Part shown: positions 7,208 through 29,300 of the stretch, piece by piece | Position numbering within the stretch: position 1 is the first letter of the stretch | Layout of the letters: each line of letters begins with the position of its first letter | Origin: Phallusia mammillata | Taxonomy: Eukaryota | Assembly: GCA_965637545.1 (NCBI GenBank) | Contig: OZ281497.1 | Coordinates: 17,608,001 to 17,672,000 of the forward strand | DNA length: 64,000 bases | Direction: 5' to 3' | Translations under genes and position numbers: made by a program | The notes under the pieces: generated by a model | What the model was told of the DNA's origin: nothing | Databases searched by the model: none | Seen by the model: the letters and a program-made list of their open reading frames with translations, nothing else

Positions 7208-10200
7208 TTATGCTCCACCACTTTTCACCTGGTTCGTGCTTCGGAGCTCGACCTGCTTGAGGCCAGCCACAAGCGATTGAAATCCGGCGTTGTAAGTTAT
7301 CGAGACACCGTTGTAATACCAATCGCTTGCTGTATCTTCATACCTGAGTTGACAAAACCTTTTTTTATTCAATCATTAACTTGAATTATTGTATAAAAAC
7401 CATAAACAGCGTGTTTTATTTCTGGTTGATGCAGGATCCTAATTTAATTATGTCAGAGTTACGTACATTGTTTTATTACATTTGGCTAGACATTAATTCT
7501 ACCTATTAAACACCAACACACAAAAAAACTTAAAAAACAACCGTCATGAAATTTTCAGCTTGTTTACTGACCTCCCGTATTTGCTCGGTCCCGATACCAG
7601 TGCACCGTACAGCGTGTGTTCGTTGCGGGGCAGCGTCCTGTAGATGACGCTTCTTGAGCAGTATTTCGGGGCGGGCGGACACGTGCTGCATGTACAGACA
7701 AGTAATTAGTCGCCAGTGTAAACTTACACACAAAGCACAAACTGAAGAAAACAACAACAACAGGGGACAACGCCTTTCCCGCAAGACATGACTTATTGCG
7801 TCCGATCAGTGATGTCAATAAACAGAAATTAAAGATCATCTATAAAAAAGTTAAGTAGTTTGCTTGGGGTGACAGACAGATTGGACGTAAATGTGGTTCT
7901 TTGAAGGTCGTCGGTTTTACGTAAAGTCTTAAGGTTTATGATCAGACTTGTCGGATCAAAATCCGCAACATGCTTCATCTGAGATGTTATAGCGTAGGCA
8001 CCGAACACGACCGCCTTAGATGTCAAAGCTGACGGTTCAACCTTTTGGAATTCGATAAGCAATTTTGGTTTATATAAATTGTCGCTGCCAGGCATGCCTT
8101 AAATAGCTCTTCAGTAATCGTTTATTCAACGTCATGTTAATATCTCTCGCGTGGTGCATGACATAAAAGACCAAAAAACGGTGGATATCAGCAATTCCTA
8201 AACCAAAAAGGCTTGTGTGCACATAAGTAATTGTTTTATCATATATGATTTTGGTCAACGATTTTAAATACGATGTTTTTGATTTGGGTCAACGATGATT
8301 TGGTCAACGTTTCAAAACACCTCTTTGTAACAGAACACTAACCTTCCTCTATGGTGGGGCCTCGTGGGAGCATTGGGTCCAACCCCAACCACAAATCCAG
8401 TTCCACCTTCACCGAGAAGTATATTAAGTTGATCGCGAGCAAATACTACATAATCGTTCGCTTTCTCTTCCGTTGGAGCGAACTCCGATGCTTGAAGAGT
8501 TAAAAAGGCGACGTTTGCTTAAAAAAAGCAGAATAAATGTTAAATCCTAACTCATGTGACAGTGTTACTTGTCAACTGAATGCAAAATTTATTTATAAAG
8601 TCTTTAAACATTGTATAGTCATCTTTCTAAATGATGTTGTTTGTATCCTATAGCAGCAAAAATGGTCTATATATAGCAGCAAAAACTGTTATGCACCTTC
8701 AACTGTTTAAAGAAAGCAATTGCAGAACGTGCAACAATAAAGCAAAACAATACCTGCGTGCATGTTTGGTCCCCGTACGTTGAGCCAGACCAGGCCGTTT
8801 GGAAGCTTGTGGGCAGCAGAAGTAAGAAGCCAATTGACAAACGTCCACGTCGCCTGTTTGTAGACTTCTTTTTGTGTGATCTTTGCCAACATGGTCTGGA
8901 AAAATCACCAAGGTCAAAGAAACGAGGATTTTTGTTGACGGGAAACTTGCATCGAAAAATCATAAAAAATGTAAGCCAAACAGTTGTGAATTAGTTTACC
9001 GTAACGCCTTGAGTCTTGTCTTCCCAGTAAAACACCTCCTTTTCGCTGGAAGTCTTCGCCAATGAGCTTTCGTATATTGTCTCCGCCTGCTGAAGGTAGC
9101 TCTCTTCTCCTGTTGCCTTGTACAGCCAAGTTGCCGCCCACGCCTGCATGCAAATACAAGTGTAAAACATGTGACCATGTGCCACCAACGTTGAAAGCCT
9201 CGGTCGTCCCTCAGAACAAGCCACAAGTTTAGCACTTGCTCAACGCATGAAGAGCTCTCGAACTGTATTTAGTTATAATACCTTCTGTTTTCGCATCGTC
9301 AATCAGAATGACATTCCTCGGTTTAGCAGCCGCGTGCAAGTCACCGCGTAAACAAGTAGACTTTCGAAGAGCGTGATACGTAAAAATTTCAGTCTATCGT
9401 GAGCGTGCGGTGCCTGTAATAACGGGTCGGAGCGCTAAAGGTCAAGAGCAATTAGCCTGGAACGACCTTGGACCGTTGCCAAATACTGACGAAGCTTTGT
9501 TTTTCTGATTATTCTGGTCATAATTCGCATATGAATTGATTTTCCCCATGAGCGCAAAGATGTTTTTCGAACTTTTTAATCATTTTCTTTCAAACTCAAT
9601 GTTTTACACGAGGGGTGGCCAAACTTTTTTACCAGAGGGCCAAATTTGCAACTGTCTTGCCACTGGAGGGCCGGATTAAATGAGATTTACGTAAAATTTG
9701 TCGTAACTAGTTGCCACCTTTATTAAAATATATATTATTGTAGTAGAATAACAATAAATAACACCATCTTGTTTACACTTGTATTTGATAAAAGGTTTAT
9801 GTATCAATGAGATAAACGCAACTGTTGCACTGCTTATTCACAGTGGTAAATATGGTGCTTGGAAAAAAAACAGGCAAGGTGTTTGGCGGGCCGTAGTTTG
9901 GCCACCACTGTTTTACACTATGTGACTGATGAGGTGTTTTTTGACACTCTCTTTTCTTCAGCTTAAAACGTGCAAAACAAGGTTAATTGAACACGCGATT
10001 CACTTAAATATCGTCTGTAGATTTCGGCGGTTTATTTTAAATAAATGTAAAATTTCATGAACCAACATTTAAGTATATATGTGTGTGTAACCGCACTTGA
10101 ATGTACGTCACTGAAATGTTTTTCGGTGCAGTGCAACCTACAACGCATGTTTACTGACATTTTTACCGCAGAAGAGTAGCGCTATGTCAATTGCAGTTTC

Positions 10201-13200
10201 ATGCATCGCTCTTTTGTGACTTTAAGCAAATTAGACTCTGGCTGTGTTGCATCGCTCTTTCGTGACTTTAAGCTACATTGTGATTGCATTACATTTCAAG
10301 ACCAATTCACACAAGTACACATATGCTTTTACTCTTGTTTACTTACCAATTCATCGTCGACTGAGTTCCACGAGTAATAGTTTGTGGATCGTTTGGGAAT
10401 TGCTGAGCTGAATCCGCCTTTGAATTTTGTAGCAAAAGTCAACAAGGTCTTAGCATGCTCCACACAGGAACTGGCCAACTCAGGATCTGTTAAAGAATTG
10501 CCATGATTTTTTCGTGGTGAAGCTGACATTGTAGAAACGCATATTCGTTTAATGTTATTTTCAACGGGTTTGTATATAATATACCAAACACAAATACTTT
10601 TCTTCTAGGCAGATTTGTAACCACTGGGTCTATTTGACAAAGTCGCTCAGAATTTGTGTTAGGAATCTGATTTTCCGCTTAAACCCGCAGTACCAAGACA
10701 TCCGTGCGGATAACCGTTAAGAAGCAGCTTTTCAAAATTCCGGGCTTTGGTTTTACCCAAAAATGGTTCTACGTTAATACACAAACGGCATGCACTTGGC
10801 CTTATAATCGGATTATTACAACTTGCAGTCACCCTCAAAGTAGATTGCAAGCGAATAATTCCACCAATCAAACTTATCCGGACAATTAACGTCGTTCAGA
10901 TGTACGGACTACTGTGAGTCACCGATGCACTAGATGTGTAAACAGGATGGAAATTGGATTACCTCATATTTACTGCATTGTTTAGGGGCTATACGAGTTC
11001 TTTTTCGCAATATTTATGACTTATAAATGTTGACAAACACAGGGTGCTATCGTGCAGCATTAATTTAAGATATCTGTTGTATCTTAGCCGGGGGCTAACG
11101 GTCGCAGTTACGGTTGTTTGTTTCAAATCACGACATGTGTGCAAACGGTGGGAATCAGTAAAGCTTCAAAACAAGCTGTTTTGTGCATTACATAATATCC
11201 AAAAACCTGAAGAGATGAGCTAATAAGCTTACAAAATGGCTGCATTATGCATACATGACATCCAAATGGCATTTTGGAATTGATTTTACCATGAGAAAAG
11301 AATTTGAAGTGTTTGAACTTTTGGTGGCTTTTCTCCTTTAATTCAATAACAAAGTAAATTTCGATTGTTAATTTAATGTATAAGTCTTTGTTGTGACCGA
11401 AATCAATATGTTGGTGGCATTGCACAAAAAATTTTTTTTTTTTTTTTTCCTTGTATACGCAATTTTCTCAAATGTGCGGGATGTGTATCAACTTGCCGCC
11501 ATCCTGCTAAAACATAATTACAGCCTATACCCATACCTTCGCTTTTAAACAGAATACTTGCAGCTGCCAGGGCCGCGGCAACTTCAGCAACTGCGTCACT
11601 GCCAGGATTTTCTTCGTTAACTTTGTACACAGTTCGCCCGTCTGCTTTTGAATCCTCCGGTCGGGCCCAACCTTTTGACGGTGTTTTGTAATTGCCAACC
11701 TTGACGAAAAGTTTTATATTATTAATTAAGTTCAGGCTAATCTGAACAAGCAATATAGTAAAGCTTTCATCCTTAACAAAACAAAAAACGCGGGCGTAGC
11801 CTATGTTTTTTTTACAAATACAATGATTTAATAAAAGCGGTATTTAAAAGTCGTCACAAAGGGTCATGTTTTCCAATTCAGGCCAAAAAACAAAAAACAA
11901 ATATTAAATTCGCCAATGCTAACAATAGCTTTGCTGTCCTAGATGCAGTTGTTATGGGAATCGCGCTATATTACAGTTTTCAAAAACCAAGCACAAAACC
12001 ATAAAGTGCAGACAATTCCTGATCGTAAGGTATCCCATTAAGGTAAAGCGAAGTTACATCAACGTTACCTGAACAACAAGTTCGTTCTCGGCTGTATGAC
12101 ACTTCAACAAGTACTCGACCGCCCAACGTATCTGATCCTTCAAATTCGCACCCTCACCGGCGACCTCGTACGCGTTCCAGTAATCTATTGCTCCCCATGC
12201 AAGCATCGTGGTTGCATGCGCGATAATCATCGTCGTTTTTACATTTCCAGCACCTGTAAACATAGAAATAAAAGACCGTTCAATTTCCTGAAGGTCATTA
12301 GGTGCAAAGGTGGATAAAAATCAAGTTTCTTGATTGCAATGTTATAATAGTAAAACATGTCGTTCGTTTTCAGCGCATCTGTGACATCGATCATAGAAAT
12401 CGAAGGTGAAGAATCATCCAATTACAATTTGGTCGCTGAACAGGGCCTTGGTTTTCAAGATATCGTCGCAATCTCGCTGTTAGTCGGCTTGTTTGTGTGC
12501 ATGTCTGCCAGTTGGTTTGTTGTAATATCATGGCGCCCGTGATAAGTCGTTCCGTAAATGGCAACGCAATATCACATAAGCTGTGTGCAAGGTCAACTCC
12601 GCAAACAACTTCCGCGGAAAGAAACATTTCTTACACAAGCGAACTCCTATTTGATCAATGTGTCTTCACGACTCGAGATAACTAAACCGACTTTCAAACT
12701 TGGTCTTGATTTGTGTATTCTCTGAAAAGGTTATGGTGCTTCTACAAAGTTCACAGACCGTGCTAAGCTAGAAACCATTTTCCCCCTGGGGCATTGTAAT
12801 TTATTTCACAAAATTATTTTATTTTTATACTCGAATACGGATTTTTCGTCCATGCAGGAATTTCCTTTCCATAACGTCACGGTCGCATAGTTCAGTTAAG
12901 TGTGGCCACGAGTCAAATATATGAGAAAGTAGCGAAGAACTGGACGTTCTTCAAGCGAAGGGCAAAGCCGGGCGTGATTTTAAGCGTTACAAAGTGTCAC
13001 CTGTTAAAAAATCGCGACGGATGCAAAAATGCTCGACGATAATTATTAGTCAGTCAAAGTGAAGGCCACCAGGATGCCAAGCACCACAAGTGCGGGTGAT
13101 ACACGGCAATGTTATTGTTCTTCGCACGTTCGAAACAAGTTTTGTATACAAGTTGCCTGGACTTCAATGTAGGTGACAATTTTATACAATGGTAACCTAT

Positions 13201-16200
13201 TTCGTAATCGCTAAATACAGATGCGTGAAACAAGTTTGCGTGGGATGACTCGCACGTTAATCTTTAAAAATCTTATACTGGTAATAAGAACCAAAAACTT
13301 AAATGCAACATGTATCGCATTTGTGATTACATGTGAAAAAATAAACTTGGCACTTTACAGCGTTAGTTCAAGCCAGCCACGTGGAAATTGCGTAATCGCT
13401 GCCCTTTTCCTATTAGGAGTCTGGCCCGTTGTCTACATTCCCACGCACGCACGAAAATGTCGGCGCCAAAATCATAGGCAAAAGCCACAATATAAACCGG
13501 CGATAGGGCGGTGACGTATGCAAAGGCCAAGCAGGGACAAGTTGTTAGGTGTTTGTGATACCCTAAACATTGCGTCTTACCGTTGTACCAGCCACCGGTA
13601 AGGTCGGTGTTTATCGAACATCCGTCCTTGAGATCCGCATCACCCCTCCACGGGATTCGATGTTCATCTGGAAGCCGCCCTGACCTCTGGGCCTCGTAGA
13701 AGAGAATAGATTTGTGAAGGACTTCGTTGTAGTCGAAATCGGAATCTGAAGTTTCGATAGGTTGTTGCAGTTATGTGAATTTTGTCAAACTTCAAGTTCA
13801 ACATTTGTGCATTCGGCAAATATGAATAAATGCAATTTAGTAAAGCACAAAAGCAGAGGTTTCAAAGCAAGGAGACACTTCTCTACAAGGAATGATGAAC
13901 ATACTTGTGTGTATTTATAGGTAAACGGGATGTGTGCATTTGTAGGTATGCGGGATATGTGCGTGAAAAACTGAGGGATGAATTTATATTTTCAAAAAAT
14001 GTTAGTTGAAAAATGTGATCAAATCTTGAGAACCTTTATACCGTTTGCAATACACTCAATCCCAAAATAAAAACGTTTACTGCAATCAGATCTTGTTGGG
14101 GTAAAAATGGTGTTAGTGTACTTACTTTTCGATTCAGAACGGATCCAATTAGGTTCAGTCTCTCCGCCCATTGCTGCTATCCCGTTTGGCGCGAACTGGG
14201 CACATCGATCAGATCCCTCAGGCTCAGGAACGTCCCTCTGAGGGGCACCAACACCCGGCAAATTAATTGGACTGTTAAATTCTCCTCCTAGTGTGGCCAG
14301 TTTGCTTGTTTCTTGATTTAAAAGGTCTTCCTTCGATGAGAGGTCATCGGGGTCGAAAGATGCCACTTTCGCTCTAAAACAGTTTTAAATTCAAGTTCAG
14401 ATTTGAACGTTTAAAAAAATAAGCTATGTTTGTTCTGTATATTTCAGAAGATGTAGATATAAGGGAGATGGATTACACATGATGCTATTTGTCTGTTCTT
14501 CTCCTCGTGTGTCAAATTCAATTTTGAGGTTTGTTTTATGTTACAGTAGGGTTGGGGATTGGGGCCTCATTTTGTATTTGTTACAATTATTATTATCCTT
14601 TTGTTTCCGCACGACTTACCTGTCAGTGATCCAAGCATCGATCGGCCTGGACATCGGATCGTCAAACGGGAGCATGGTGCCAATTTGTCGCCCTGCTACA
14701 TTATCTCCGCTGCATATCCCAAGCAATTGAACCCATCCACGGACGAGCGGAATGCTATCTTCGGGATATCGACCATTGAAACTTATCGTCAAACCCTATC
14801 GCAATAAATAATACATGGAGATAAAATACGACAATAGAGTGAACCTTGATAGGGACAATTTATTTGTACAGTTTGCTACAGTAATATTTTTAGGAAGTAA
14901 TAAAGCAAACAGTATTTAAAATCTCCACAAAATTTTAGAGGTCAAAAGGCATGTTTGAATCTCTGTAACGTTCTTCCTTTGAACACAAAAGCGTATAGCA
15001 TAGTTTACTATTTTTTTACCTGGTTAGCATCTAGATTCACATGGTAATCCATAGGGGCAAGGCAAAACTCTTGTCGACTTCTGGATGCACTCATGAACCA
15101 AACGTTTGCTGGTTCAACTTCGGACACAGGTATGTTGAACATAAAGCGGACAACCCAGCCACCTCTGATTGCCCGTGGAAGTGAAGGAACATGCGCTGTA
15201 GCGCTGAATCCATCGTCCCATACACTATGAACCTTAATAGTTCCGTTATAAGTTGGGCAACCATAAACGTTGCCGTCCATAGACCTTAACGGCTTGTAAG
15301 TTATAGTTCCGTTTTCGATCCAGCTGTCGCCAACCAATGGAGTGTTGGAGAAGTCCGTCATGACCATATTGGTCGATGGAGTAGTTTGCAGTGGTGCTGT
15401 TTGCCCTGCAGTCCTAGGTTGAATTTGTTTAATAGAATTAACTTTCGTGGTTGGATTTACAAATGGTGTTGTATGGGTCGTCGTAATCTGCTTTGTAGTT
15501 TGGGTCGTTGTTGGCAGCACTGTTGATTCCGCCTCTTCTCCTGAAGCTACTTCCACAACTTTTTCTGCAGCTCCACCGGCTAGAGGTGCTGTTTTTTCAG
15601 TTTGAACTTTCTGCGTAGCGGGGGTTGTAATTACTGGCCTGGTTGTCTTAACAACCGGGGCCTTTTTCGACGTCGGCCCCCAAATGTTTTTGCTGGGGTA
15701 AAACTTTTGACGCGTCGTTTTTTGAGTCGTCGGATTCTCTTCCTCTTCTTCCGCTGATTCCGTCGGAGTGGGTTTTGCTGACTTTTTGACAGACGACTTC
15801 TTCTTGCCGTAGAATTTCCCTTGATTGCTGGCACTTCGAGGACGCGGTTTGATATAAGTTCGTCCCAAGTAAGAGAGCGGGAGCTCTTCCTCTTCTTCCT
15901 CCTCCTCCTCTTCTTCCTCTTCCTCTGCGGAGTCGTAGATCCTTTGCTTTTGTGCCCTCCAGGATCGTTTTAGTATCGGTGTGGGTTTCGCTTTAACTGT
16001 CGAGCTGCTTACACACTTGGGCATTTTGCTTGGACTCCACAGACCCGTTGTAATACTGCACGTTTTGTAGGCCGTGCCGTCGCTAATCACAAAGCCTTTA
16101 TTGCACATCACCCTGCAACGATTCCTTCTGATTGTGCATTGGATCTTGCCGTTCTTCGGATGAACCAATGGCCGACAGCCAGATTGCATCAGACGTTGAC

Positions 16201-19200
16201 CAGTGATGGTGCCTGCGTTAATACAGGGGTATATAAAGGTAAGTTAATGCAAACAAGTGGTACTATCATATCTTAAGCTCAAAAAGGACAACATAAATTT
16301 AAGCGATATTCCCACCAAAAACATATAGTTTTAGAAATAAGGCCGGTATGGCAGTCCTATCTACATAGTAAAAAATAAGAAAAGTAATTTTGTTGTTACC
16401 ACATTTTAAATCTAGACTGACTATTGGTATTGATGACTTATTTAATTGACCCACCATCAATAAGCCGAGAAAAGAAACGTGTGTTTCTTGGTGATGAAGG
16501 CACTGGATTGTAACGGAGTTTATAGGAGAGCTTGTTTTCTCCTTCTTGGTTGTTTCGCAGTTGAAGAAACAATATGTACTTTCCAAATGGTTTAACCGGA
16601 GTACATATTGGAGATGGACCGAAGGAACCAAGACTGCAAAGAAACAAAGATTATTTTTGTTGACCTATATATAGTCCTATACCATATGTCCTCCGAGGAC
16701 AATACAAATGCCCATACGTCTCCTGTTTACGTTTTCTGTTTTACCTAATGTACTTTACAATGCTATCAAAACCTTTGAAAACAATCGTCATCTTAACCTT
16801 GAGAAAACAGATATAAGAAGTTTTTGAGCGTATTATTTTTGTGATAGCGCGTACTTGTTCAGAGTTAAGTCTACAATTCATTCAAAAATCTACAATTCAT
16901 TCAAACTGGTATATAAAAATGGCTACGTTGAATTCGTGAAATATTTGATGTATTTATTGTTTGTGTGTACAAAAAATGTCTGTTTATAATGTTTTTCAAC
17001 AAAGTGTCATCTTTTTTGATGATGAAAATATGGTAGAGCTCTATTTGTGAAATCGTTAAACCGAAAACAATTCATCTGCAAGGTGAATAGTCGTTTTTTT
17101 GCAAACTTTAGATAAACCTACTTTACTTTTCGTCTTGACATATTGATTCTATGAAAATACCTACTTGAGTTCGTCTCCAATAGCAAGGCCTCCTTTTTTC
17201 TTTGAGAAAACGCTGATCACTCGAAAGGTGGCGCTATAGCGGCTTTTCGGGTCTTTCTGCGTCGTTTTGAAAACTATTCCTTGGACAACGACATCAGACC
17301 TGCAAAAAATATGCTGTTAGAGACCACGTTAACCCGAAATAAAGTTATTGTTTCAAAGACAGAAAAAAAAAACTAAACAGTTCTACGTCGAATCTGCCTT
17401 GTTACAACGGGGAAACCGTCGCTGGGGTGTGTATGGCGTTATCTGAAAGCAGCATTTTTTTTGAAGCGATATCTTCCTTTGTGGTTGGCATATGTTTGTA
17501 AACGCTACGAACTGTTTAGCCCCTATGGTGACCTGGGGCCGCGAACCTTTCTAAATAATCTAAAAAGTTAATCAGTAACACCTGTTTTTGCAGGTTTTTA
17601 AATAACAGGCAACCGCAGTTCGCTACTAAAATCCGTCCTAAACCTAACAACACGACTTGATGAAGTCAATTCGTGCACGAAGGACGCTATTGAAAGGTAA
17701 TCACATCCGCGAATAAACAAAAACAAAATGCCAACATCCCGCATTCCACTCTGGACCATAATAGCCTTCGCGCCACGGGCAATATTATCTACAGCTGGTT
17801 TCAACAACATTCCAATTCAAACGTGCAGAGAAAGGGAGAAAAATAACTTGAAAATTCCCCAATAAAACCAGACAATTAGTAAAGCACCACGATCCGGGCG
17901 ATAAATAACCAGTGTTAGGATTCGCGATCCGATAATTTATACGCGTCGGGTATATCAACGAAAAGATCTTGAAGCACGTCTCCATTTGTTTTTCGAACCA
18001 CTAAAGGGTTAATATCCCTTTCAACTTTTCTCGCCTTTGTTTTGATTATGATTTTTTTTTTAACTTATCAAATTGCTTTAGTTTCTGCTTAACGCACGAA
18101 GATAAATATCTTTGTTAAGGTAGACTGGTGATATTTAATATTCACCTGCATTTTAGACCGAGTGATCTATTAATATTTCCAAAGACACAAAGTGCAGTTT
18201 AAAGACGTTAATAAGTATCTGAACATAATTTGGCTAATTTGAGCAATTTGGATCTTAAAAATGTCAACTGATTTTAAGATGTGGTAAAAATTGCGTTTCG
18301 CAAACGATTGAATCTCGAGAGGAATTCCTAATCGCGGCATCGCGTCGTTGATTTTCAACTTACAAGGCAGATACGAATCGGCAATTACCGAAACAGACCT
18401 AAATTGAGTTCGGAACCCGGTAGTGAAAGCAAATATGCCGACCAAACCCGACCCGTATGGTCGCTGTGTGCAGTTGCGGAAAGCACAGGTGCTTTCACGT
18501 GTAATTTGTATCAGTTTTGGGTCTCTTCGCTACAACAAGAGTACACGCAAATTTCATGTTGTGGGTTGACCCAACAACGCCCATCAGGCGGTCACCTCTT
18601 GTCGAAACTAGTCAATGCATCAGTGTAAATACGTCAGACTAGTTTGTTTCAGCGAACGAGCGTAATCTCTGATTACACGTTAACAAGAGACGGCGATGTT
18701 TTCGCCAATTTCTAGGACTTCAATTTTTTCTCTTAAAAACACATGCACAGACATTAAGGATAACAGGAAAAATGAAGGAAATTAATAATAACCAGTAACT
18801 GCTTTTATTCGACGCCTAAGGGTTGACTATCGTATTACAAGCTGTCTTACCGCACGGCGACTATATAGGAGTCGAATGTTAAGAGATGAAATCTAACTTT
18901 CAAGCGAAATTGGAGGTTGTGTGGGTTTTTGAACTATCGACCGTGATGTAATCACCGCCTCCTGGCGGATGTTGGTTTTTAGCATCAACGTAACTTCAGT
19001 TTCCGGACCTGGTCAGTTGAGGCCACTATTAAAGCTAATAAATTCTGATTCGCCGTAAGATTGGAGATATAACTAGCTCTTATCCAAATGTGTTTTTTCA
19101 CGTTAATCGGATTTGGTCGTCTAAATCCCTGTACACGCAAATCGGAAACACGGCCTAAGGTATTTGGTGATTGACGAGCAACGATTCGACGCAATACTAA

Positions 19201-19750
19201 GTAGCATAATCTGAATTAGGCGGCGATCCTACATTAGTTGCAAAACGCAGATTTGGTTTGCAGCATCTCATATTGTTTTGAGAGTGTGGATGCAAATCTT
19301 GAAAACAGGGCTGGCTTTCCACGGCCAATAAAAGCAAATTCGGCTTGAATAAAACATGGATCAGAAAAACACAAAAATATTCAAATATTCCCGAATAAAA
19401 GTAGGCTAAATCACGCTTGATGTATGGTAAGCAAAACAAACGTTTTTTCATACAACGAAACAGTACAGAAAAAAATAAACTTATAAATCTATTTTTTTGT
19501 TTTCGTATCTCACTAAACTCGGTTTTACACCAAACACGAGTGAACAATTGTCTAAAAATCACACATACCTTGTGGCAAATTCACCAAATTTGATTCGTCG
19601 CTCGGGAACAACGCATCCTGATGTCACGTGAATCATCATCGAAGATATAAGACACACGTAAACGAAGATGGGCGTGAGATATCGATGAAAAAACATCATG
19701 TTGCGCGATTGACCATCATAAAATCCTGGGTATGTCCCTGATTTCGCCAT
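7208..19750 (-). CDS. Secreted multidomain GH9 endoglucanase-like protein (signal peptide, NtA-like, Sushi/CCP, poly-Glu/Thr-rich linker, CBM2-like, GH9), predicted catalytically inactive; ~1141-1158 aa
   Basis: 15 phase-consistent GT-AG exons: 19750 (or 19699)-19569, 17299-17165, 16633-16455, 16212-15020, 14795-14620, 14373-14126, 13745-13581, 12253-12069, 11699-11537, 10486-10347, 9143-9000, 8895-8754, 8517-8343, 7685-7572, 7343-7208. GH9 motifs present: DYNEVLHKSILFYEAQRSGRLP, DLTGGWY, LAWG, PGSDAVAEVAAALAAASILF, DELAWAATWLYKATG, PHHRGSTCP, GALVSGP, YNAGFQSLVAGL. Confidence 0.92.
9610..9910. mobile_element. hAT (Charlie-like) MITE, 301 bp, in a GH9 intron
   Basis: TIRs GAGGGGTGGCCAAAC (9610-9624) and GTTTGGCCACCACTG (9896-9910). 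Perfect 8-bp TSD TTTTACAC (9602-9609 and 9911-9918). GGGCCG subterminal motifs. Confidence 0.88.
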
Positions 19751-24700: not shown

Positions 24701-25448
24701 CAACAATTAGACAATGTAAAAGGATCCATTTCACAACAATGTAAAAATTCATTTTTAAGACAACTAACAGGTTTTTCGACTGGTTAAAAAGTCGGCTTTA
24801 AATTAAAGGGGGAAATATAACCGACACGATTGGTGGATCAGGATTAAATGCGCTACAGTCAAATAGTGATTAGAATGTGCCATGTCTTACGTTTTGCACC
24901 AAGTGAATGTTGTTTTAACCCAGTAGAATTCGGTTGCGACAAAAAGGTTTTGAATTAAAAATGGTTATTCGGAATTTATCTGATACATAAACTTAGTTGT
25001 TTCAAGTCGGCCTTTTGAACTACGTCATTGAATGTAGGCCTATTAACAGCCCGCTAGCGCTGCCATGTGATTAAATTTTACAAATGTACATAATGACCCT
25101 AATTATTTATTTTCATTCCAAACTGAAATTGGTGACCAAGATCAATTGGTACACACATGGTAATCCTAAACTTTGCTGATTGTATAAAATTAATACAACA
25201 CAATACCATTATCATCCCAAGCGATAAACATAATTTCAACAGAGGGAAAGTCCCACATGTTAATCTCTGTCAAGCAAATGAAATTAATTTTAGTGTGATG
25301 TTTGAACTTTGGATTGTTTGCATTGCATCCCTGTTAAAAAAATAAACGGCGTAAGTCTAGAAAGAATAAATATAAACTAATTTGTATATATTTGTTGTTG
25401 TTTGTGTTACTTCAAGGTGCTGCGTGTTTGTCAAACGTTTTAGTCAAA

Positions 25449-26042
25449 ATGAGTCAATTTCCAATCACCGGTTTAGCTGATTGTGTTTATACCAAGTTCT
25501 ACTGTGAAGAGAATATTTGGAAACTGTGTGACATCGTTTCGCAAAAGACACCAGAGCTACTTGATCACCTTTGCGTCATTTTCATATCTAATGATAGCAA
25601 AAAAGTTGTGATGTTTAACCAAAGGGCAACAGTTGAAGATGATGAAGTGGTTGTGTGGGATTACCATGTCATAGCATTATTTACACAAATGGTTGATGGA
25701 AAACCATGTCATAGCATATATGACATGGACACCAAACTTCCTTTTCCCTGTGCTCTGGAAAAGTATGTTCTAGAAACATTTAAGCCTGACATGGTGCTAA
25801 GACCTGGATTTGAGCGTCTTCTTAAAGTTATTAAAGCAAGAGAATTTCTAGACAGATTTGCATCTGATAGATCGCACATGATTAAAGATGATGGCTCATG
25901 GCTAGCCACTCCTCCTGCGTACCCATGTATATGCACAAAAGATAGCAAAATGAACCTTGATGACTATATGAATATGACTCCTGGTATTGGTGATGTTTAT
26001 ACTGTTTCAAATTTTATGGGTCACTTTGGTTTGCCAGTTTAA
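25449..26042 (+). CDS. NTAQ1: Protein N-terminal glutamine amidohydrolase (Nt-Gln amidase, N-degron pathway), intronless, 197 aa
   Basis: Single ORF with YCEENIWKLC, VWDYHVIAL, IYDMDTKLPFP and FASDRSHM motifs; the Cys-His-Asp triad is intact. A splice-acceptor-like TTACTTCAAG lies ~35 nt upstream of the ATG at 25449, so the longer ORF start at 25392 is probably not used. Confidence 0.95.
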   Translation: MSQFPITGLADCVYTKFYCEENIWKLCDIVSQKTPELLDHLCVIFISNDSKKVVMFNQRATVEDDEVVVWDYHVIALFTQMVDGKPCHSIYDMDTKLPFPCALEKYVLETFKPDMVLRPGFERLLKVIKAREFLDRFASDRSHMIKDDGSWLATPPAYPCICTKDSKMNLDDYMNMTPGIGDVYTVSNFMGHFGLPV

Positions 26043-26307
26043 CTGTGTAAATTTATTAGACTTTTGTGCTGTGGTTAAAATCATAAAACATAATGTCCTT
26101 TGTGCTTTGGTTTTTATTTTATTTTATATCATGTAGTAAAATGTTATCTAAAACCTGATATGCATTTTAAAAATTTTGCTGTTGTATTTTTTTATTCATA
26201 TCTGTAAATTTATGAAACCATAAAAATTTGTGCATGTTCTTAAGTGCTTTAAAACTACTGTGTGTTGTATTGCATAACTGTATTTGCAGTTGGGTACTAG
26301 TTTTAAA

Positions 26308-29300
26308 ATGCCTGGTCGCTTGAAAGTTCGTGTTGTAGCTGGAAGACATCTTCCTGTAATGGACAGAGCATCTGATCTCACCGATGCATTTGTTGAGGTA
26401 GAGCTTTGCTTGTTTATGGTTAAATGCATACTTCATTCTGGTAAGAATGTTTCAATGTGCACCCAAACACATATATCCAGGCTGTTGTGTGCAGTCTTGT
26501 GGTACTGATATGAATTAAATTTATTACAATCAACAATCAAAAGGTTACTGAAAAACTGCATTATTTTTGCAGGTTAAATTTGGTTCAACTACATACAAAA
26601 CAGATGTTTATTCCAAATCATTAAATCCCCTGTGGAACTCACCCTGGTTTACATTTGAGGTAACAGTTTTTTGTTCTTACTCCGCCCAGTTTTTAAAGTT
26701 GCTTGTATTCTGTAGGTGGATGATGAACATTTGCAAGACGAACTGCTGCAAGTTCGTGTTTTGGACCATGACACGTATAGTGCCCATGATGCAATTGGTA
26801 AAGTTAGCATAGATATTGATCCTCTATTGGATCCAGAGTCAAGAAATGATTTATATGGTTGGTTTCCAATTTATGACACCATGCATGGTAAGAGTACAAA
26901 TACCACTTTAGTTACCTTCCCCAGAATTTACACATGAGTTTCTTTTCCTTTAAGGCATTCGTGGTGAAATCCTGTTAAAAGTTAAGCTTGAGCTTTTTGC
27001 TGACAGCAACCAGTTCCGACAATCATCATGTGGCTTTAAGTTCATCTGTGGTAAGAATTCTGAATAAATGCTCAAATGCATCAAGTTTATCATAATTTAT
27101 TGCTGTTGCTTTTAGCTACCAAAGTTCCTGATTGCTACACAATTACTGCTATTCATGGATTCGTTCATGAACTCCTTGTAAAAGAAGATCCTGAGTACAA
27201 GTGGATCGACAAGCTACGAACACCCAGAGCATCAAATGAAGCCAGACAGAGATTGTTTTCTAAAATGTCGGGTGAACTTCAGAGACATATTGGCAATAAG
27301 GTACAACAAACTGTGTGCAGTATAATATAAAACCATGAGCCTAGAGAATTACAAGTGGTATGTTATAAAACGCTGGATGACTTCAGAATTGTCATTGTCA
27401 TTCTGAAGGTACAATAAAGTATTAACCACAATGAATCTTTAAAATAGACAAATGATGCTTATTGAATTGTCTGTTAAAAGCAAATTAAAACATACATTGC
27501 CCTTAGACCTGTAGTGCCAAGTATTTTTGTTTTGATATAGGTGGAGAGTATTGGAGGCAATGCTGTAGTTGGTTTCCACCAGTCATTTGATATTGAAGGC
27601 GATTCGGGAATTGTGGTTCGAGGGATCGGTACAGCTGTCAGCATCGACGCCATCCCCCGCATGTCCCATCGAAACAGTAAAATGTTGGTATGCTTAATAA
27701 TGATGCAAACAAGCAGTTTTCGTCATTTTATTTGCTAACAGATCTCCGAAACTTTTTGACCAGCAAGACACTGCTTTTCAAATGCCAATCGAAGAGACCA
27801 GCTTTCCCGAAAGTGCCAATCTGGTATACATGGCCTTCAAACTTTAAGAGTGTTTTTGGTTGCTTTAATGGTGATATGACACGCTTTTATCTTCCAATGT
27901 TAATAGTTTGTTGTATAATATCTACTTGCATTAACATAGTTAATATATAAAAATAATACTTGATATCTATAGTTGTACACACATTTTATTTAGCTTCACC
28001 AGTCCTTGCACGAAGAAGCTTTTCACGAAACACGGGGTTACCTTTTTCACAGGCAATCGAATCTTCAAGGTCACTTAACAGGCGTGCTCAAGGTTTGTTT
28101 GTAGTTTCACTGCATTTTCGTCAACCCGGGCTTCATAACACTTTTAAATATGCAGGACTTTCCTTTCTATACACTGCGTTCGTTTCCCGTTAACTTCGTA
28201 ACGAGGATTGCGACCATGGTTACTTCGCACTCTGTAAAACTGCTGGAAAAAGTTTACAGCACAGGTTTGTATAGAGACGCAAATTCGTACAGTTCTCGAC
28301 CTTGATACAACATAATGTACTATACTATTTATGTAAGTTGTGTTGGAACTTGTCGGTAGTGATCAGATTACATTGGAAAAATGCATGGACGAAACTGATT
28401 TTACAGCCGAGTCGGAAACACGTAGTGGTTGGTGGAACGAACTTCGACAAGAGGTCAAAAGCAATTGTCATGCCCTCGGATGCAACAGCGTGATTGGATA
28501 CAAGGAGAGGACCACAATATGGTAACAATATGGCGTTTTGTCGCGTCGGTATTGGTAAGAAATAATGGCGCGTTGATGTGTTGTATTTTGCCAAATAACA
28601 ACAATAGTATGTAGGTTATGGTGCAGTGGTACACTATGCGCTCTTGTTGCAAAATATCATGAAAATCAAGCTCTAGTGGATCTTTTTTTAGCGATGAAGT
28701 TATCATCCTGAGCGCGCAAGGAAGTGCAGCGGTCATAGATTTGTCGTTTTTGGGCCAAGGCAGCAACTTTAATGGTAAGCATATGACCTACTAGCACGGA
28801 GTAAAGTATGTTTGGTTTGAAATTAATAATAATGTACTACTTCCCCTAACGTAAGCCTGTCACTTCTAATTTGCTTCTTAGCTATCAGCAGACAAAGTTC
28901 ACGTGATGCTCTAGCTCCACCATACGGTAGCGGAACGATTAAATCGGAGGCCAGGTACGGCTACAACTCAAAATTACAGTTTAACCCTAATACCAATAAC
29001 AGACAAGAATTAGGAGACACTTCTTTTGCAGCAGTACCAAACGCGAAACAAGCGAGGCCGACATCTTTCGAGTGCCCTTTCGCATGAATGAACAAACCTT
29101 TCCCATGAGCTTTCAGCCATCTCCCGTTAATCCTAATATTATGGTTCCCGACATTTTGTTTGCAGCCGTTGATGTTCCGGATGGAGTTCGAACTTGTGGC
29201 AAAGCAGCATTTATTCAAGCGAGGTTGGTAAATTACCTTGGCGCAAAAGTTAAAACCAAATTCGCAGTATTACGAATATACTTAATTTGGTAATTGGAAT

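What the first reader, a model, noticed from the sequence alone, without database searches (positions are those of the whole stretch)
14126..19750. Unusual architecture: agrin NtA-like + Sushi/CCP + CBM2-like modules fused ahead of the dead GH9 (possible matrix-to-cellulose adaptor)
Seen in sequence: after a signal-peptide-like MMFFHRYLTPIFVYVCLISSMMIHVTSG, exons 1-3 splice to CVVPERRIKFGEFATRSDVVVQGIVFK...RYSATFRVISVF...NLGSFGPSPICTPVKPFGKYILFL. By eye this parallels the agrin N-terminal (NtA) domain (CPER...NVVLTGTV...YSCKVRVWRYL...ISGFGDPLICD...RIFFV). Exon 4 starts with a CCP module (CRPLVHPKNG...CRVMCNKGF...KTCSITTGLWSPSKMPKC). Exons 4-5 encode a CBM2-like module (CPTYNGTIKVHSVWDDGFSATAHV...GGWVVRFMF...LTISFNG...C). 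Established: agrin NtA binds laminin coiled coils and CBM2 binds crystalline cellulose. Inference: one secreted protein with a protein-matrix-binding end and two cellulose-binding ends could link epidermal surface or matrix proteins to tunic cellulose. I do not recognise this combination from characterised proteins.
Basis: partly seen in the sequence, partly recalled or inferred. Interest (0 to 1): 0.8.

Follow-up and report, generated by a model that had tools for sequence, protein, structure and literature searches.

The report
Barrel–Sushi–CBM2 head on dead cellulase
A sea-squirt gene makes one secreted protein that joins an agrin-NtA-like barrel, a Sushi module and a cellulose-binding module to a cellulase lacking its catalytic residues; other sea squirts keep it, so it may tie tunic cellulose to proteins.

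Summary
A 15-exon minus-strand gene (19699 to 7208) encodes a 1,141-residue protein. In order it has a signal peptide, a beta-barrel, a short Sushi/CCP module, an acidic and Thr/Pro-rich linker, a divergent CBM2, and a GH9 domain without its catalytic Asp/Glu.

Transcriptome-like contigs from four runs (two studies) show every predicted junction. One 4.2-kb contig spans exon 1 into the GH9 part, so this is probably a single transcript.

All three module calls are right, with one correction. The barrel's closest solved fold is agrin NtA (Z 10.8-11.1), tied with NTR modules. By sequence it belongs to Pfam NRG2_N, not NtA. Laminin binding is therefore not supported.

- CBM2+GH9 is the common animal cellulase layout.
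- Active sea-squirt GH9 paralogues also carry a similar Cys-rich Sushi-like module, CBM2s and the same short motif before GH9.
- Only the barrel is specific to this catalytically dead lineage. It is present in Clavelina and in at least four other contigs.

The matrix-to-cellulose adaptor idea is plausible but untested. The scan already noted the dead GH9 on this same window (s1-380842). I rate this a new variant of a known kind, interest about 0.55.

The parts
19616..19699 (-). Start codon and signal-peptide-like N-terminus (residues 1-28). An upstream in-frame ATG at 19750 would add 17 residues.
   Evidence: The translation has a hydrophobic core and small residues at -3/-1 before Cys29. The transcript contigs extend 341 nt beyond 19650.
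19569..19615 (-). Barrel, part 1 (exon 1 remainder). The predicted mature N-terminus starts with Cys and continues into the first helix.
   Evidence: It is collinear with L001, L005 and Clavelina. The exon 1-2 junction is seen in RNA contigs.
17165..17299 (-). Barrel, part 2 (exon 2): first two long strands.
   Evidence: Pfam NRG2_N 22.8 bits on profile positions 4-43, with weak Vein_beta-barrel and TIMP hits. Junctions.
16455..16633 (-). Barrel, part 3 (exon 3): second Cys, last strands and C-terminal helix.
   Evidence: Pfam NRG2_N 19.9 bits on profile positions 48-88. It is 54% identical to the L001 exon.
16013..16177 (-). Short Sushi/CCP module (Cys161 to Cys215) with six Cys. Four sit at the CCP consensus positions together with the Trp; the other two are an extra pair.
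   Evidence: The profile of nine orthologous modules hits almost only CCP proteins in the PDB, best E 1.4e-5. Pfam Sushi matches 8 of 9 members. The window's own module folds at pLDDT 83 and all top 50 fold matches are CCP modules, most at rmsd about 2-3 A.
15332..16012 (-). Linker with a run of 14 Glu, Lys-rich stretches and Thr/Pro-rich mucin-like stretches.
   Evidence: Translation. It cannot be aligned between species, whereas the modules can.
15020..15331 (-). Conserved pre-CBM2 segment plus the first three quarters of the CBM2 (Cys467, Trp480, the GGW core, Ala517 at the middle aromatic position, Tyr538).
   Evidence: Pfam CBM_2 E 0.016, below the cut-off. hhalign against Pfam-verified animal CBM2s gives 99.2% probability, E 2.6e-19. 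Column comparison.
14712..14795 (-). Last strands of the CBM2 (exon 5), ending in the conserved C-terminal Cys574.
   Evidence: Splice junction. Conserved in L001, L005 and Clavelina.
14126..14711 (-). Linker (rest of exon 5, intron, exon 6). It includes a conserved Arg-Cys...Trp motif at about 14145-14207, just ahead of GH9.
   Evidence: The motif is 52% identical to Clavelina. It is shared with active sea-squirt GH9 paralogues and absent from the acorn-worm protein.
7208..13745 (-). GH9-like domain (exons 7-15, residues about 689-1126). Asn-Gly-Ala-Gly-Asn replaces the Asp-Ala-Gly-Asp motif and Asn-Gly-Val replaces Asn-Glu-Val.
   Evidence: Pfam Glyco_hydro_9 on exon 7. Gene model and motifs. 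This is the subject of earlier finding s1-380842.

Best explanation
SHOWN. One expressed gene encodes a secreted 1,141-residue modular protein. In order it has a signal peptide, an NtA/NTR/TIMP-fold beta-barrel of the Pfam NRG2_N family, one short Sushi/CCP module, a long acidic and mucin-like linker, a divergent CBM2, a short linker, and a GH9 domain without catalytic carboxylates. It belongs to the sea-squirt branch of the old animal CBM2-GH9 cellulase family. Active sea-squirt paralogues share the Sushi-like module, the CBM2 and the pre-GH9 motif. The dead lineage alone carries the N-terminal barrel.

INFERRED. The protein no longer cuts cellulose but still holds it. The CBM2 would bind on its flat aromatic face and the GH9 would bind in its cleft. 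The barrel and Sushi head, held away on a flexible glycosylated stalk, would bind a protein or glycosaminoglycan partner. The molecule would then tether or organise tunic cellulose relative to a cell-surface or matrix component. The partner is unknown, and laminin is only one candidate.
For: - The gene model is in one frame with canonical splice sites.
- All junctions of exons 1-7 appear in contigs from four runs in two studies, and one contig spans exon 1 into GH9.
- Barrel: the Clavelina orthologue scores 46.6 bits on NRG2_N against a cut-off of 27, and the window's exons 2 and 3 hit the same profile collinearly. The AlphaFold model has pLDDT 83.5. Its top matches are agrin NtA (Foldseek E about 3e-5, TM 0.63; Z 10.8-11.1), then PCOLCE NTR (Z 10.2), C3/C4/C5 C345C and TIMPs. 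Scores drop to Z about 6 for generic OB folds.
- CCP.
- CBM2.
- Conservation: collinear barrel, Sushi and CBM2 exons occur in L001, L002, L004 and L005, and L005 also has the GH9 exon. The Clavelina RefSeq protein has barrel+CBM2+dead GH9. Modules are 40-54% identical between species while linkers cannot be aligned.
- Origin: the window's and Clavelina's dead GH9 domains form a 100/100 clade. That clade sits inside the sea-squirt single-GH9 group that carries Sushi-like and CBM2 modules.
Against: - No expression site, binding data or partner is known, so the function is inference.
- The window's CBM2 has Ala where the middle surface aromatic normally sits. Orthologues have Tyr or Phe there. 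This copy may bind crystalline cellulose more weakly.
- Pfam CBM_2 and Sushi stay below their cut-offs for the window's own modules.
- The Clavelina orthologue lacks the Sushi module, so that module is dispensable.
- The barrel and the full CBM2 of the window could not be folded themselves because introns split them. The barrel model is of the Clavelina orthologue (46% identical), built on a shallow alignment made of exon fragments.
- The node placing the dead clade inside the sea-squirt group has only 82/99 support.
Confidence: 0.6

Rival explanations
1. One reading: the barrel is a true agrin-type NtA domain that binds the laminin coiled coil. The protein would then bridge basement-membrane laminin to tunic cellulose.
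For: The four agrin NtA entries are the top four fold matches, aligned over nearly the whole domain. Both domains sit directly behind a signal peptide and start at a Cys. The helix-barrel-helix layout is the same.
Against: Pfam NtA gives no hit at E up to 1, and no NtA chain in the PDB is hit at E up to 10 by sequence or by profile. The domain scores above the cut-off on a different family, NRG2_N. Structure-based identity is only 14-17%. The Z for NtA is within 1 of the PCOLCE NTR module, which the tool treats as a tie. Agrin's laminin-contact residues could not be compared. The tunic lies on the apical, outer side of the epidermis, away from the basement membrane (general ascidian anatomy, from my own knowledge).
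Confidence: 0.12
2. A TIMP-like inhibitor head: the barrel, with its Cys at the mature N-terminus, inhibits a metalloprotease, and the CBM2 and dead GH9 park it on cellulose.
For: TIMP-1, -2 and -3 are among the fold matches at Z about 7-8.7. A weak Pfam TIMP hit falls on exon 2. The Cys directly after the predicted signal cleavage site is conserved in the window, L001, L005 and Clavelina.
Against: The barrel has only two Cys, so only one disulfide is possible. The Cys-x-Cys start of TIMPs is absent (my own knowledge of TIMPs). TIMPs score below NtA and NTR modules.
Confidence: 0.08
3. A leftover of a digestive cellulase with no role in the tunic. It would be either a gut-secreted cellulose or algal-wall binding protein, or a gene drifting towards loss.
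For: Animal GH9 enzymes are usually described as digestive (PMC10334666, background). The window's CBM2 has lost the middle aromatic residue. The dead clade has a long branch in the tree.
Against: The reading frame is intact across 15 exons. The gene is transcribed in eight runs. The same modules are kept at 40-54% identity in several divergent genomes while the linkers are free to change. In Oikopleura, GH9 genes are expressed in the cellulose-secreting epithelium (preprint 10.64898/2026.03.31.715263).
Confidence: 0.15
4. A gene-model artefact: the 5' exons belong to a separate neighbouring gene and the fusion is only apparent.
For: Assembled contigs can in principle be chimaeric, and the tool warns that a contig across two genes does not prove a single transcript.
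Against: The exon 3-4 and exon 6-7 junctions are present in all four runs. The reading frame is continuous. The same order of exons is found in L005, and the same fusion is annotated independently in Clavelina.
Confidence: 0.03

Closest known systems
Animal CBM2-GH9 endoglucanases (molluscs, sea urchin, acorn worm, coral, Oikopleura)
   Same: A secreted protein with N-terminal CBM2 module(s), a linker and a GH9 domain. The window's CBM2 profile matches theirs at 99.2% hhalign probability.
   Different: Those proteins keep the Asp-Ala-Gly-Asp and Asn-Glu-Val catalytic motifs and have no barrel. The window's protein has neither catalytic motif, has only one CBM2, and adds a barrel and a Sushi module.
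Active single-GH9 proteins of sea squirts (for example Clavelina P0054/P0056, Phallusia P0057/P0051, Styela P0052)
   Same: A similar Cys-rich Sushi-like module at the N-terminus, divergent CBM2s, the Arg-Cys motif about 35 residues ahead of GH9, and membership of the same GH9 clade.
   Different: They have two CBM2s, intact catalytic motifs and no NRG2_N-type barrel.
Clavelina lepadiformis LOC143461127 (P0036; CAK8689662 = P0008)
   Same: The likely orthologue: signal peptide, barrel (46% identical), CBM2 (40%), the pre-GH9 motif and a dead GH9 (49%). Precomputed Pfam lists PF25518 + PF00759.
   Different: It has no Sushi module. Its long repeat linker lies between CBM2 and GH9 rather than before the CBM2. 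It is only machine-annotated, as 'uncharacterized' or 'cellulase'.
Agrin NtA domain (PDB 1JB3, 1JC7, 1PXU, 3I70)
   Same: The best structural match, with Z 10.8-11.1 and 115-119 aligned residues. It is a five-stranded barrel with flanking helices, placed directly behind the signal peptide.
   Different: There is no detectable sequence-family match, and identity is 14-17%. It is followed by a Sushi module, not by follistatin-like modules. Laminin binding is unknown.
NTR / C345C / TIMP modules (PCOLCE, complement C3-C5, meteorin, TIMP-1 to -3)
   Same: The same fold class, with Z 7-10.2 and a clear gap to generic OB folds at Z about 6. These are extracellular protein- or glycosaminoglycan-binding modules (general knowledge).
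   Different: Those modules carry more disulfides and most are C-terminal. The window's barrel has one possible disulfide and is N-terminal.

Membership tests
Agrin NtA (Pfam PF03146) | Sequence-profile match to the NtA family | tested here: not met
   Neither the window's exons (E up to 10) nor the Clavelina orthologue's domain (E up to 1) hit NtA in Pfam. No NtA chain in the PDB is hit at E up to 10 by phmmer or by profile.
Agrin NtA (Pfam PF03146) | Five-stranded beta-barrel flanked by N- and C-terminal helices | tested here: met
   The model of the orthologue has helix 14-20, five strands and helix 113-123. NtA entries rank first, with Z 10.8-11.1.
Agrin NtA (Pfam PF03146) | Binds the laminin coiled coil | not testable with these tools
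   This needs a binding assay. The contact residues could not be compared because no reliable NtA sequence alignment was obtainable.
NRG2 N-terminal domain (Pfam PF25518) | Score above Pfam's gathering cut-off (27 bits) | tested here: met
   The Clavelina orthologue scores 46.6 bits over profile positions 2-88 of 90. The window's exons 2 and 3 score 22.8 and 19.9 bits on adjoining halves of the profile. The window's spliced domain could not be submitted whole.
Sushi / CCP (Pfam PF00084) | Four consensus Cys, the conserved Trp before the last Cys, and a sequence-profile match | tested here: met
   The Cys and Trp pattern is invariant in nine modules. The profile hits almost only CCP proteins in the PDB, best E 1.4e-5. 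Pfam Sushi matches 8 of 9 members, best E 1.5e-6, but not the window's own copy.
Sushi / CCP (Pfam PF00084) | CCP beta-sandwich fold | tested here: met
   The window's own module was modelled at pLDDT 83.4. The top 50 Foldseek matches are all CCP modules, most at rmsd about 2-3 A, with E from 3e-3.
CBM2 (Pfam PF00553) | Sequence-profile match | tested here: met
   Pfam alone is below the cut-off (16 bits against 24). hhalign of 14 sea-squirt modules against 14 animal modules (taken from proteins found, several with Pfam CBM_2 hits above the cut-off) gives 99.2% probability, E 2.6e-19, over 99 columns. Three of the four weak PDB hits are CBM2 structures.
CBM2 (Pfam PF00553) | Cys near each end of the module | tested here: met
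   Cys467 and Cys574 are conserved in the window, L001, L005 and Clavelina.
CBM2 (Pfam PF00553) | Three surface aromatic residues forming the flat cellulose-binding face | tested here: inconclusive
   The window has Trp480, Ala517 and Tyr538. Most orthologues have Trp, Tyr/Phe and Tyr. The geometry was not modelled.
GH9 endoglucanase (Pfam PF00759) | GH9 fold by profile | tested here: met
   Exon 7 alone gives E 2.7e-15. The orthologue scores 377.6 bits over the full profile.
GH9 endoglucanase (Pfam PF00759) | Catalytic Asp pair and catalytic Glu | tested here: not met
   In my gene model, Asn-Gly-Ala-Gly-Asn and Asn-Gly-Val replace the motifs kept in all active relatives compared. This agrees with earlier finding s1-380842.

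The most novel reading that the evidence does not exclude
In the only animals that make cellulose, a cellulase was disarmed and given a matrix-type docking head (NtA/NTR-fold barrel plus Sushi). It became a non-enzymatic organiser that clamps nascent or mature cellulose microfibrils to a defined epidermal-surface or tunic-matrix partner. This would be an animal counterpart of the cellulase-like helpers of cellulose synthesis in plants and bacteria, working by binding rather than by cutting.
Probability: 0.18. Interest if true: 0.8.

Novelty: new variant of a known kind. Interest (0 to 1): 0.55.

Why it matters
Sea squirts and their relatives are the only animals that build with cellulose. Apart from the horizontally acquired synthase and GH6 genes, very little is known about the proteins that shape tunic cellulose or attach it to the animal. 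This gene is a concrete, conserved and expressed candidate. It keeps two cellulose-recognising modules, has lost catalysis, and has gained a head of a kind used elsewhere for extracellular protein docking.

It also gives the recently defined NRG2_N domain family a new context outside neuregulins, and links that family structurally to NtA and NTR modules. If the adaptor idea is right, the protein is a handle for asking how an animal epithelium organises a plant-like polymer. If it is wrong, this is still a clean example of a pseudoenzyme formed by domain accretion.

Tried and rejected
- The window's own barrel and complete CBM2 could not be submitted to Pfam or folded as whole domains. I used per-exon references and the Clavelina orthologue as a stand-in.
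- Alignment A3 misplaced the exon 5 fragments and A6 misplaced the exon 3 fragments. Both were discarded. A5 was used for folding although six residues of each exon 3 fragment are misplaced in it.
- Sequence searches of the barrel against the PDB gave only chance hits such as ROP5 and IpaD, or nothing.
- In the large protein search, P0002, P0011, P0017, P0022 and P0023 are repeat proteins that match by composition. I ignored them.
- L001 ends before any GH9 exon, so it says nothing about the fusion.
- Ciona LOC100176349 and Styela LOC120328443 looked like possible orthologues but are tandem double-GH9 proteins without the barrel.
- No annotated barrel-bearing orthologue from Ciona, Styela or Phallusia was found within the length ranges searched. 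That is not proof of absence.
- Five full-text literature searches found no description of this architecture.
- The organism and the tissues of the RNA runs are coded, so no expression site could be read.
Full report
**What is in the sequence.** The feature lies on the minus strand. From the ATG at 19699 I could join six exons with canonical GT..AG introns: 19699-19569, 17299-17165, 16633-16455, 16212-15020, 14795-14620 and 14373-14126. They keep one reading frame, which runs on into the first GH9 exon at 13745. An upstream in-frame ATG lies at 19750. Guided by the Clavelina protein, I extended the model through nine more exons to a stop ending at 7208, giving 1,141 residues.

**Is it one transcript?** Eight runs whose small contig sets look like transcriptomes hold exon 4. 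I laid the contigs of four of them, from two studies, on 13651-19650. All six junctions appeared at the predicted bases, each with CT..AC ends on the plus strand. Intron depth was zero. In one run a single 4,224-nt contig runs from 341 nt upstream of 19650, through exons 1-7, and 1,775 nt beyond. That length fits a 3,426-nt coding sequence plus untranslated ends. The tool warns that contigs are not molecules. Even so, the continuous frame, the repeat of the exon 3-4 and exon 6-7 junctions in all four runs, and the same fusion in other genomes make a two-gene artefact very unlikely.

**Relatives.**
- A word search with exon 4 found one homologue on a 13.5-kb metagenome contig, L001. It carries collinear exons 1-5 at 32-54% identity.
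- A full-library profile search with the CBM2 part found 29 proteins. These include exon-4-like fragments from several assemblies and an annotated Clavelina lepadiformis protein.
- The longer Clavelina isoform (P0036, 1,177 aa) has a signal peptide, the barrel (46% identical), a CBM2 (40%), a long repeat linker, the same short motif ahead of GH9, and a dead GH9. It has no Sushi module.
- Contigs L002, L004 and L005 also carry barrel exons ahead of the Sushi/CBM2 exon. L005 has exons 1-5 and the first GH9 exon.
- Modules are conserved across these genomes while the linkers cannot be aligned.

**The barrel.**
- Exon by exon, the window's exons 2 and 3 hit adjoining halves of Pfam NRG2_N (22.8 and 19.9 bits), with faint Vein_beta-barrel and TIMP hits.
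- The spliced Clavelina domain scores 46.6 bits against a cut-off of 27. Nothing matches Pfam NtA.
- Sequence and profile searches of the PDB find no NtA chain.
- An AlphaFold model of the Clavelina domain, built with the window, L001, L002, L004 and L005 exon fragments as alignment rows, reached pLDDT 83.5 and pTM 0.79. It shows a helix, five strands and a helix.
- In Foldseek the four agrin NtA entries come first (E 2.5-4.6e-5, TM about 0.63). PCOLCE NTR, complement C345C, TIMPs and meteorin NTR follow.
- VIA-align gives NtA Z 10.8-11.1, PCOLCE NTR 10.2, C3 about 9 and TIMPs about 8.7.
- A search that does not depend on Foldseek gives the same order, with a drop to Z about 6 for ordinary OB folds.

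NtA is nominally nearest, but it is tied with NTR modules, and the sequence family is NRG2_N. I know of no described function for NRG2_N. Agrin's laminin binding cannot simply be transferred to it.

**The Sushi module.** Nine orthologous modules share six invariant Cys and a Trp. Four Cys and the Trp sit at the CCP consensus positions. Their profile hits almost only CCP proteins in the PDB, best E 1.4e-5. Pfam Sushi matches 8 of the 9 members, though not the window's own copy. The window's own module folds at pLDDT 83.4, and all top 50 structural matches are CCP modules, most at rmsd about 2-3 A.

**The CBM2.**
- Pfam alone is weak, at E 0.016.
- Three of the four faint PDB hits are CBM2 structures.
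- A profile of 14 sea-squirt modules aligns to a profile of 14 animal CBM2s, drawn from proteins found, several of which hit Pfam CBM_2 above the cut-off. The match has 99.2% probability, E 2.6e-19.
- Reciprocal HMM searches agree.
- The terminal Cys pair and the first surface Trp are kept, and the third aromatic residue is Tyr.
- The middle aromatic is Tyr or Phe in most orthologues but Ala517 in the window.

**How unusual is the combination?** A survey of GH9 proteins of 647-2,060 residues shows CBM2+GH9 in molluscs, a sea urchin, a coral, Oikopleura and an acorn worm. Only the Clavelina proteins carry NRG2_N+GH9. My own HMMs show that active sea-squirt GH9 proteins start with a very similar Cys-rich Sushi-like module followed by two CBM2s. 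They also share an Arg-Cys motif about 35 residues ahead of GH9 that the acorn-worm protein lacks.

In a GH9 tree, the window's and Clavelina's dead domains form a 100/100 pair on a long stem. That pair sits inside the sea-squirt single-GH9 group, with 82/99 support. The simplest history is this: a sea-squirt Sushi-CBM2-CBM2-GH9 gene duplicated, and one copy lost catalysis and one CBM2 and gained the barrel. The order of these events was not tested.

**Function.** Shown: secretion signals, module identities, transcription and conservation. Inferred: the protein holds cellulose without cutting it and uses the barrel/Sushi head to bind something else. A preprint reports GH9 genes expressed in the cellulose-secreting epithelium of Oikopleura (10.64898/2026.03.31.715263). 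This makes a role outside digestion reasonable. I found no paper describing this architecture. The expression site in this animal is unknown because the run metadata are coded.

**Verdict.** This is a new variant of the animal CBM2-GH9 family, partly overlapping an earlier finding on the same window (s1-380842, the dead GH9).

Noticed in passing
window 25392-26042 (+): A single-exon ORF of 216 residues that is a clear N-terminal glutamine amidase (Pfam Nt_Gln_amidase, E 2e-64).
   Followed up: partly
window 26284-26937 (+): Two short ORFs hit the first and last parts of a C2 domain. They are probably exons of a C2-domain gene next to the amidase gene.
   Followed up: partly
P0045 (Ciona LOC100176349), P0038 (Styela), P0042 (Clavelina), P0043: Sea squirts also have proteins with two GH9 domains in tandem. 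My motif scan found no Asp-Ala-Gly-Asp motif in them, and Gln-Ser-Ser-Val in place of Asn-Glu-Val in one domain. This may be a second, independent group of inactive GH9 domains.
   Followed up: partly
P0013, P0018, P0020, P0027: Proline-rich repeat proteins that end in a CBM2-like module of the sea-squirt type but lack the first surface Trp. Pfam finds nothing in the two I tested, P0013 and P0018. Their source organisms are unknown.
   Followed up: no
window about 14145-14207 (-); P0036 residues 729-750: A short Arg-Cys...Trp motif about 35 residues ahead of the GH9 domain. It is shared by dead and active sea-squirt GH9 proteins and absent from the acorn-worm protein. Its role is unknown.
   Followed up: partly
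P0036 residues about 400-720: The Clavelina orthologue has some twenty Thr/Glu/Ala/Pro-rich repeats between CBM2 and GH9, whereas the window's long linker lies before the CBM2. The RefSeq isoform also skips the first part of the GH9 domain, which the other Clavelina model (P0008) includes.
   Followed up: no
window 15491-17203: Nine single-base differences between the transcript contigs and the window, several shared between the two studies (table 3). They look like ordinary polymorphism.
   Followed up: no
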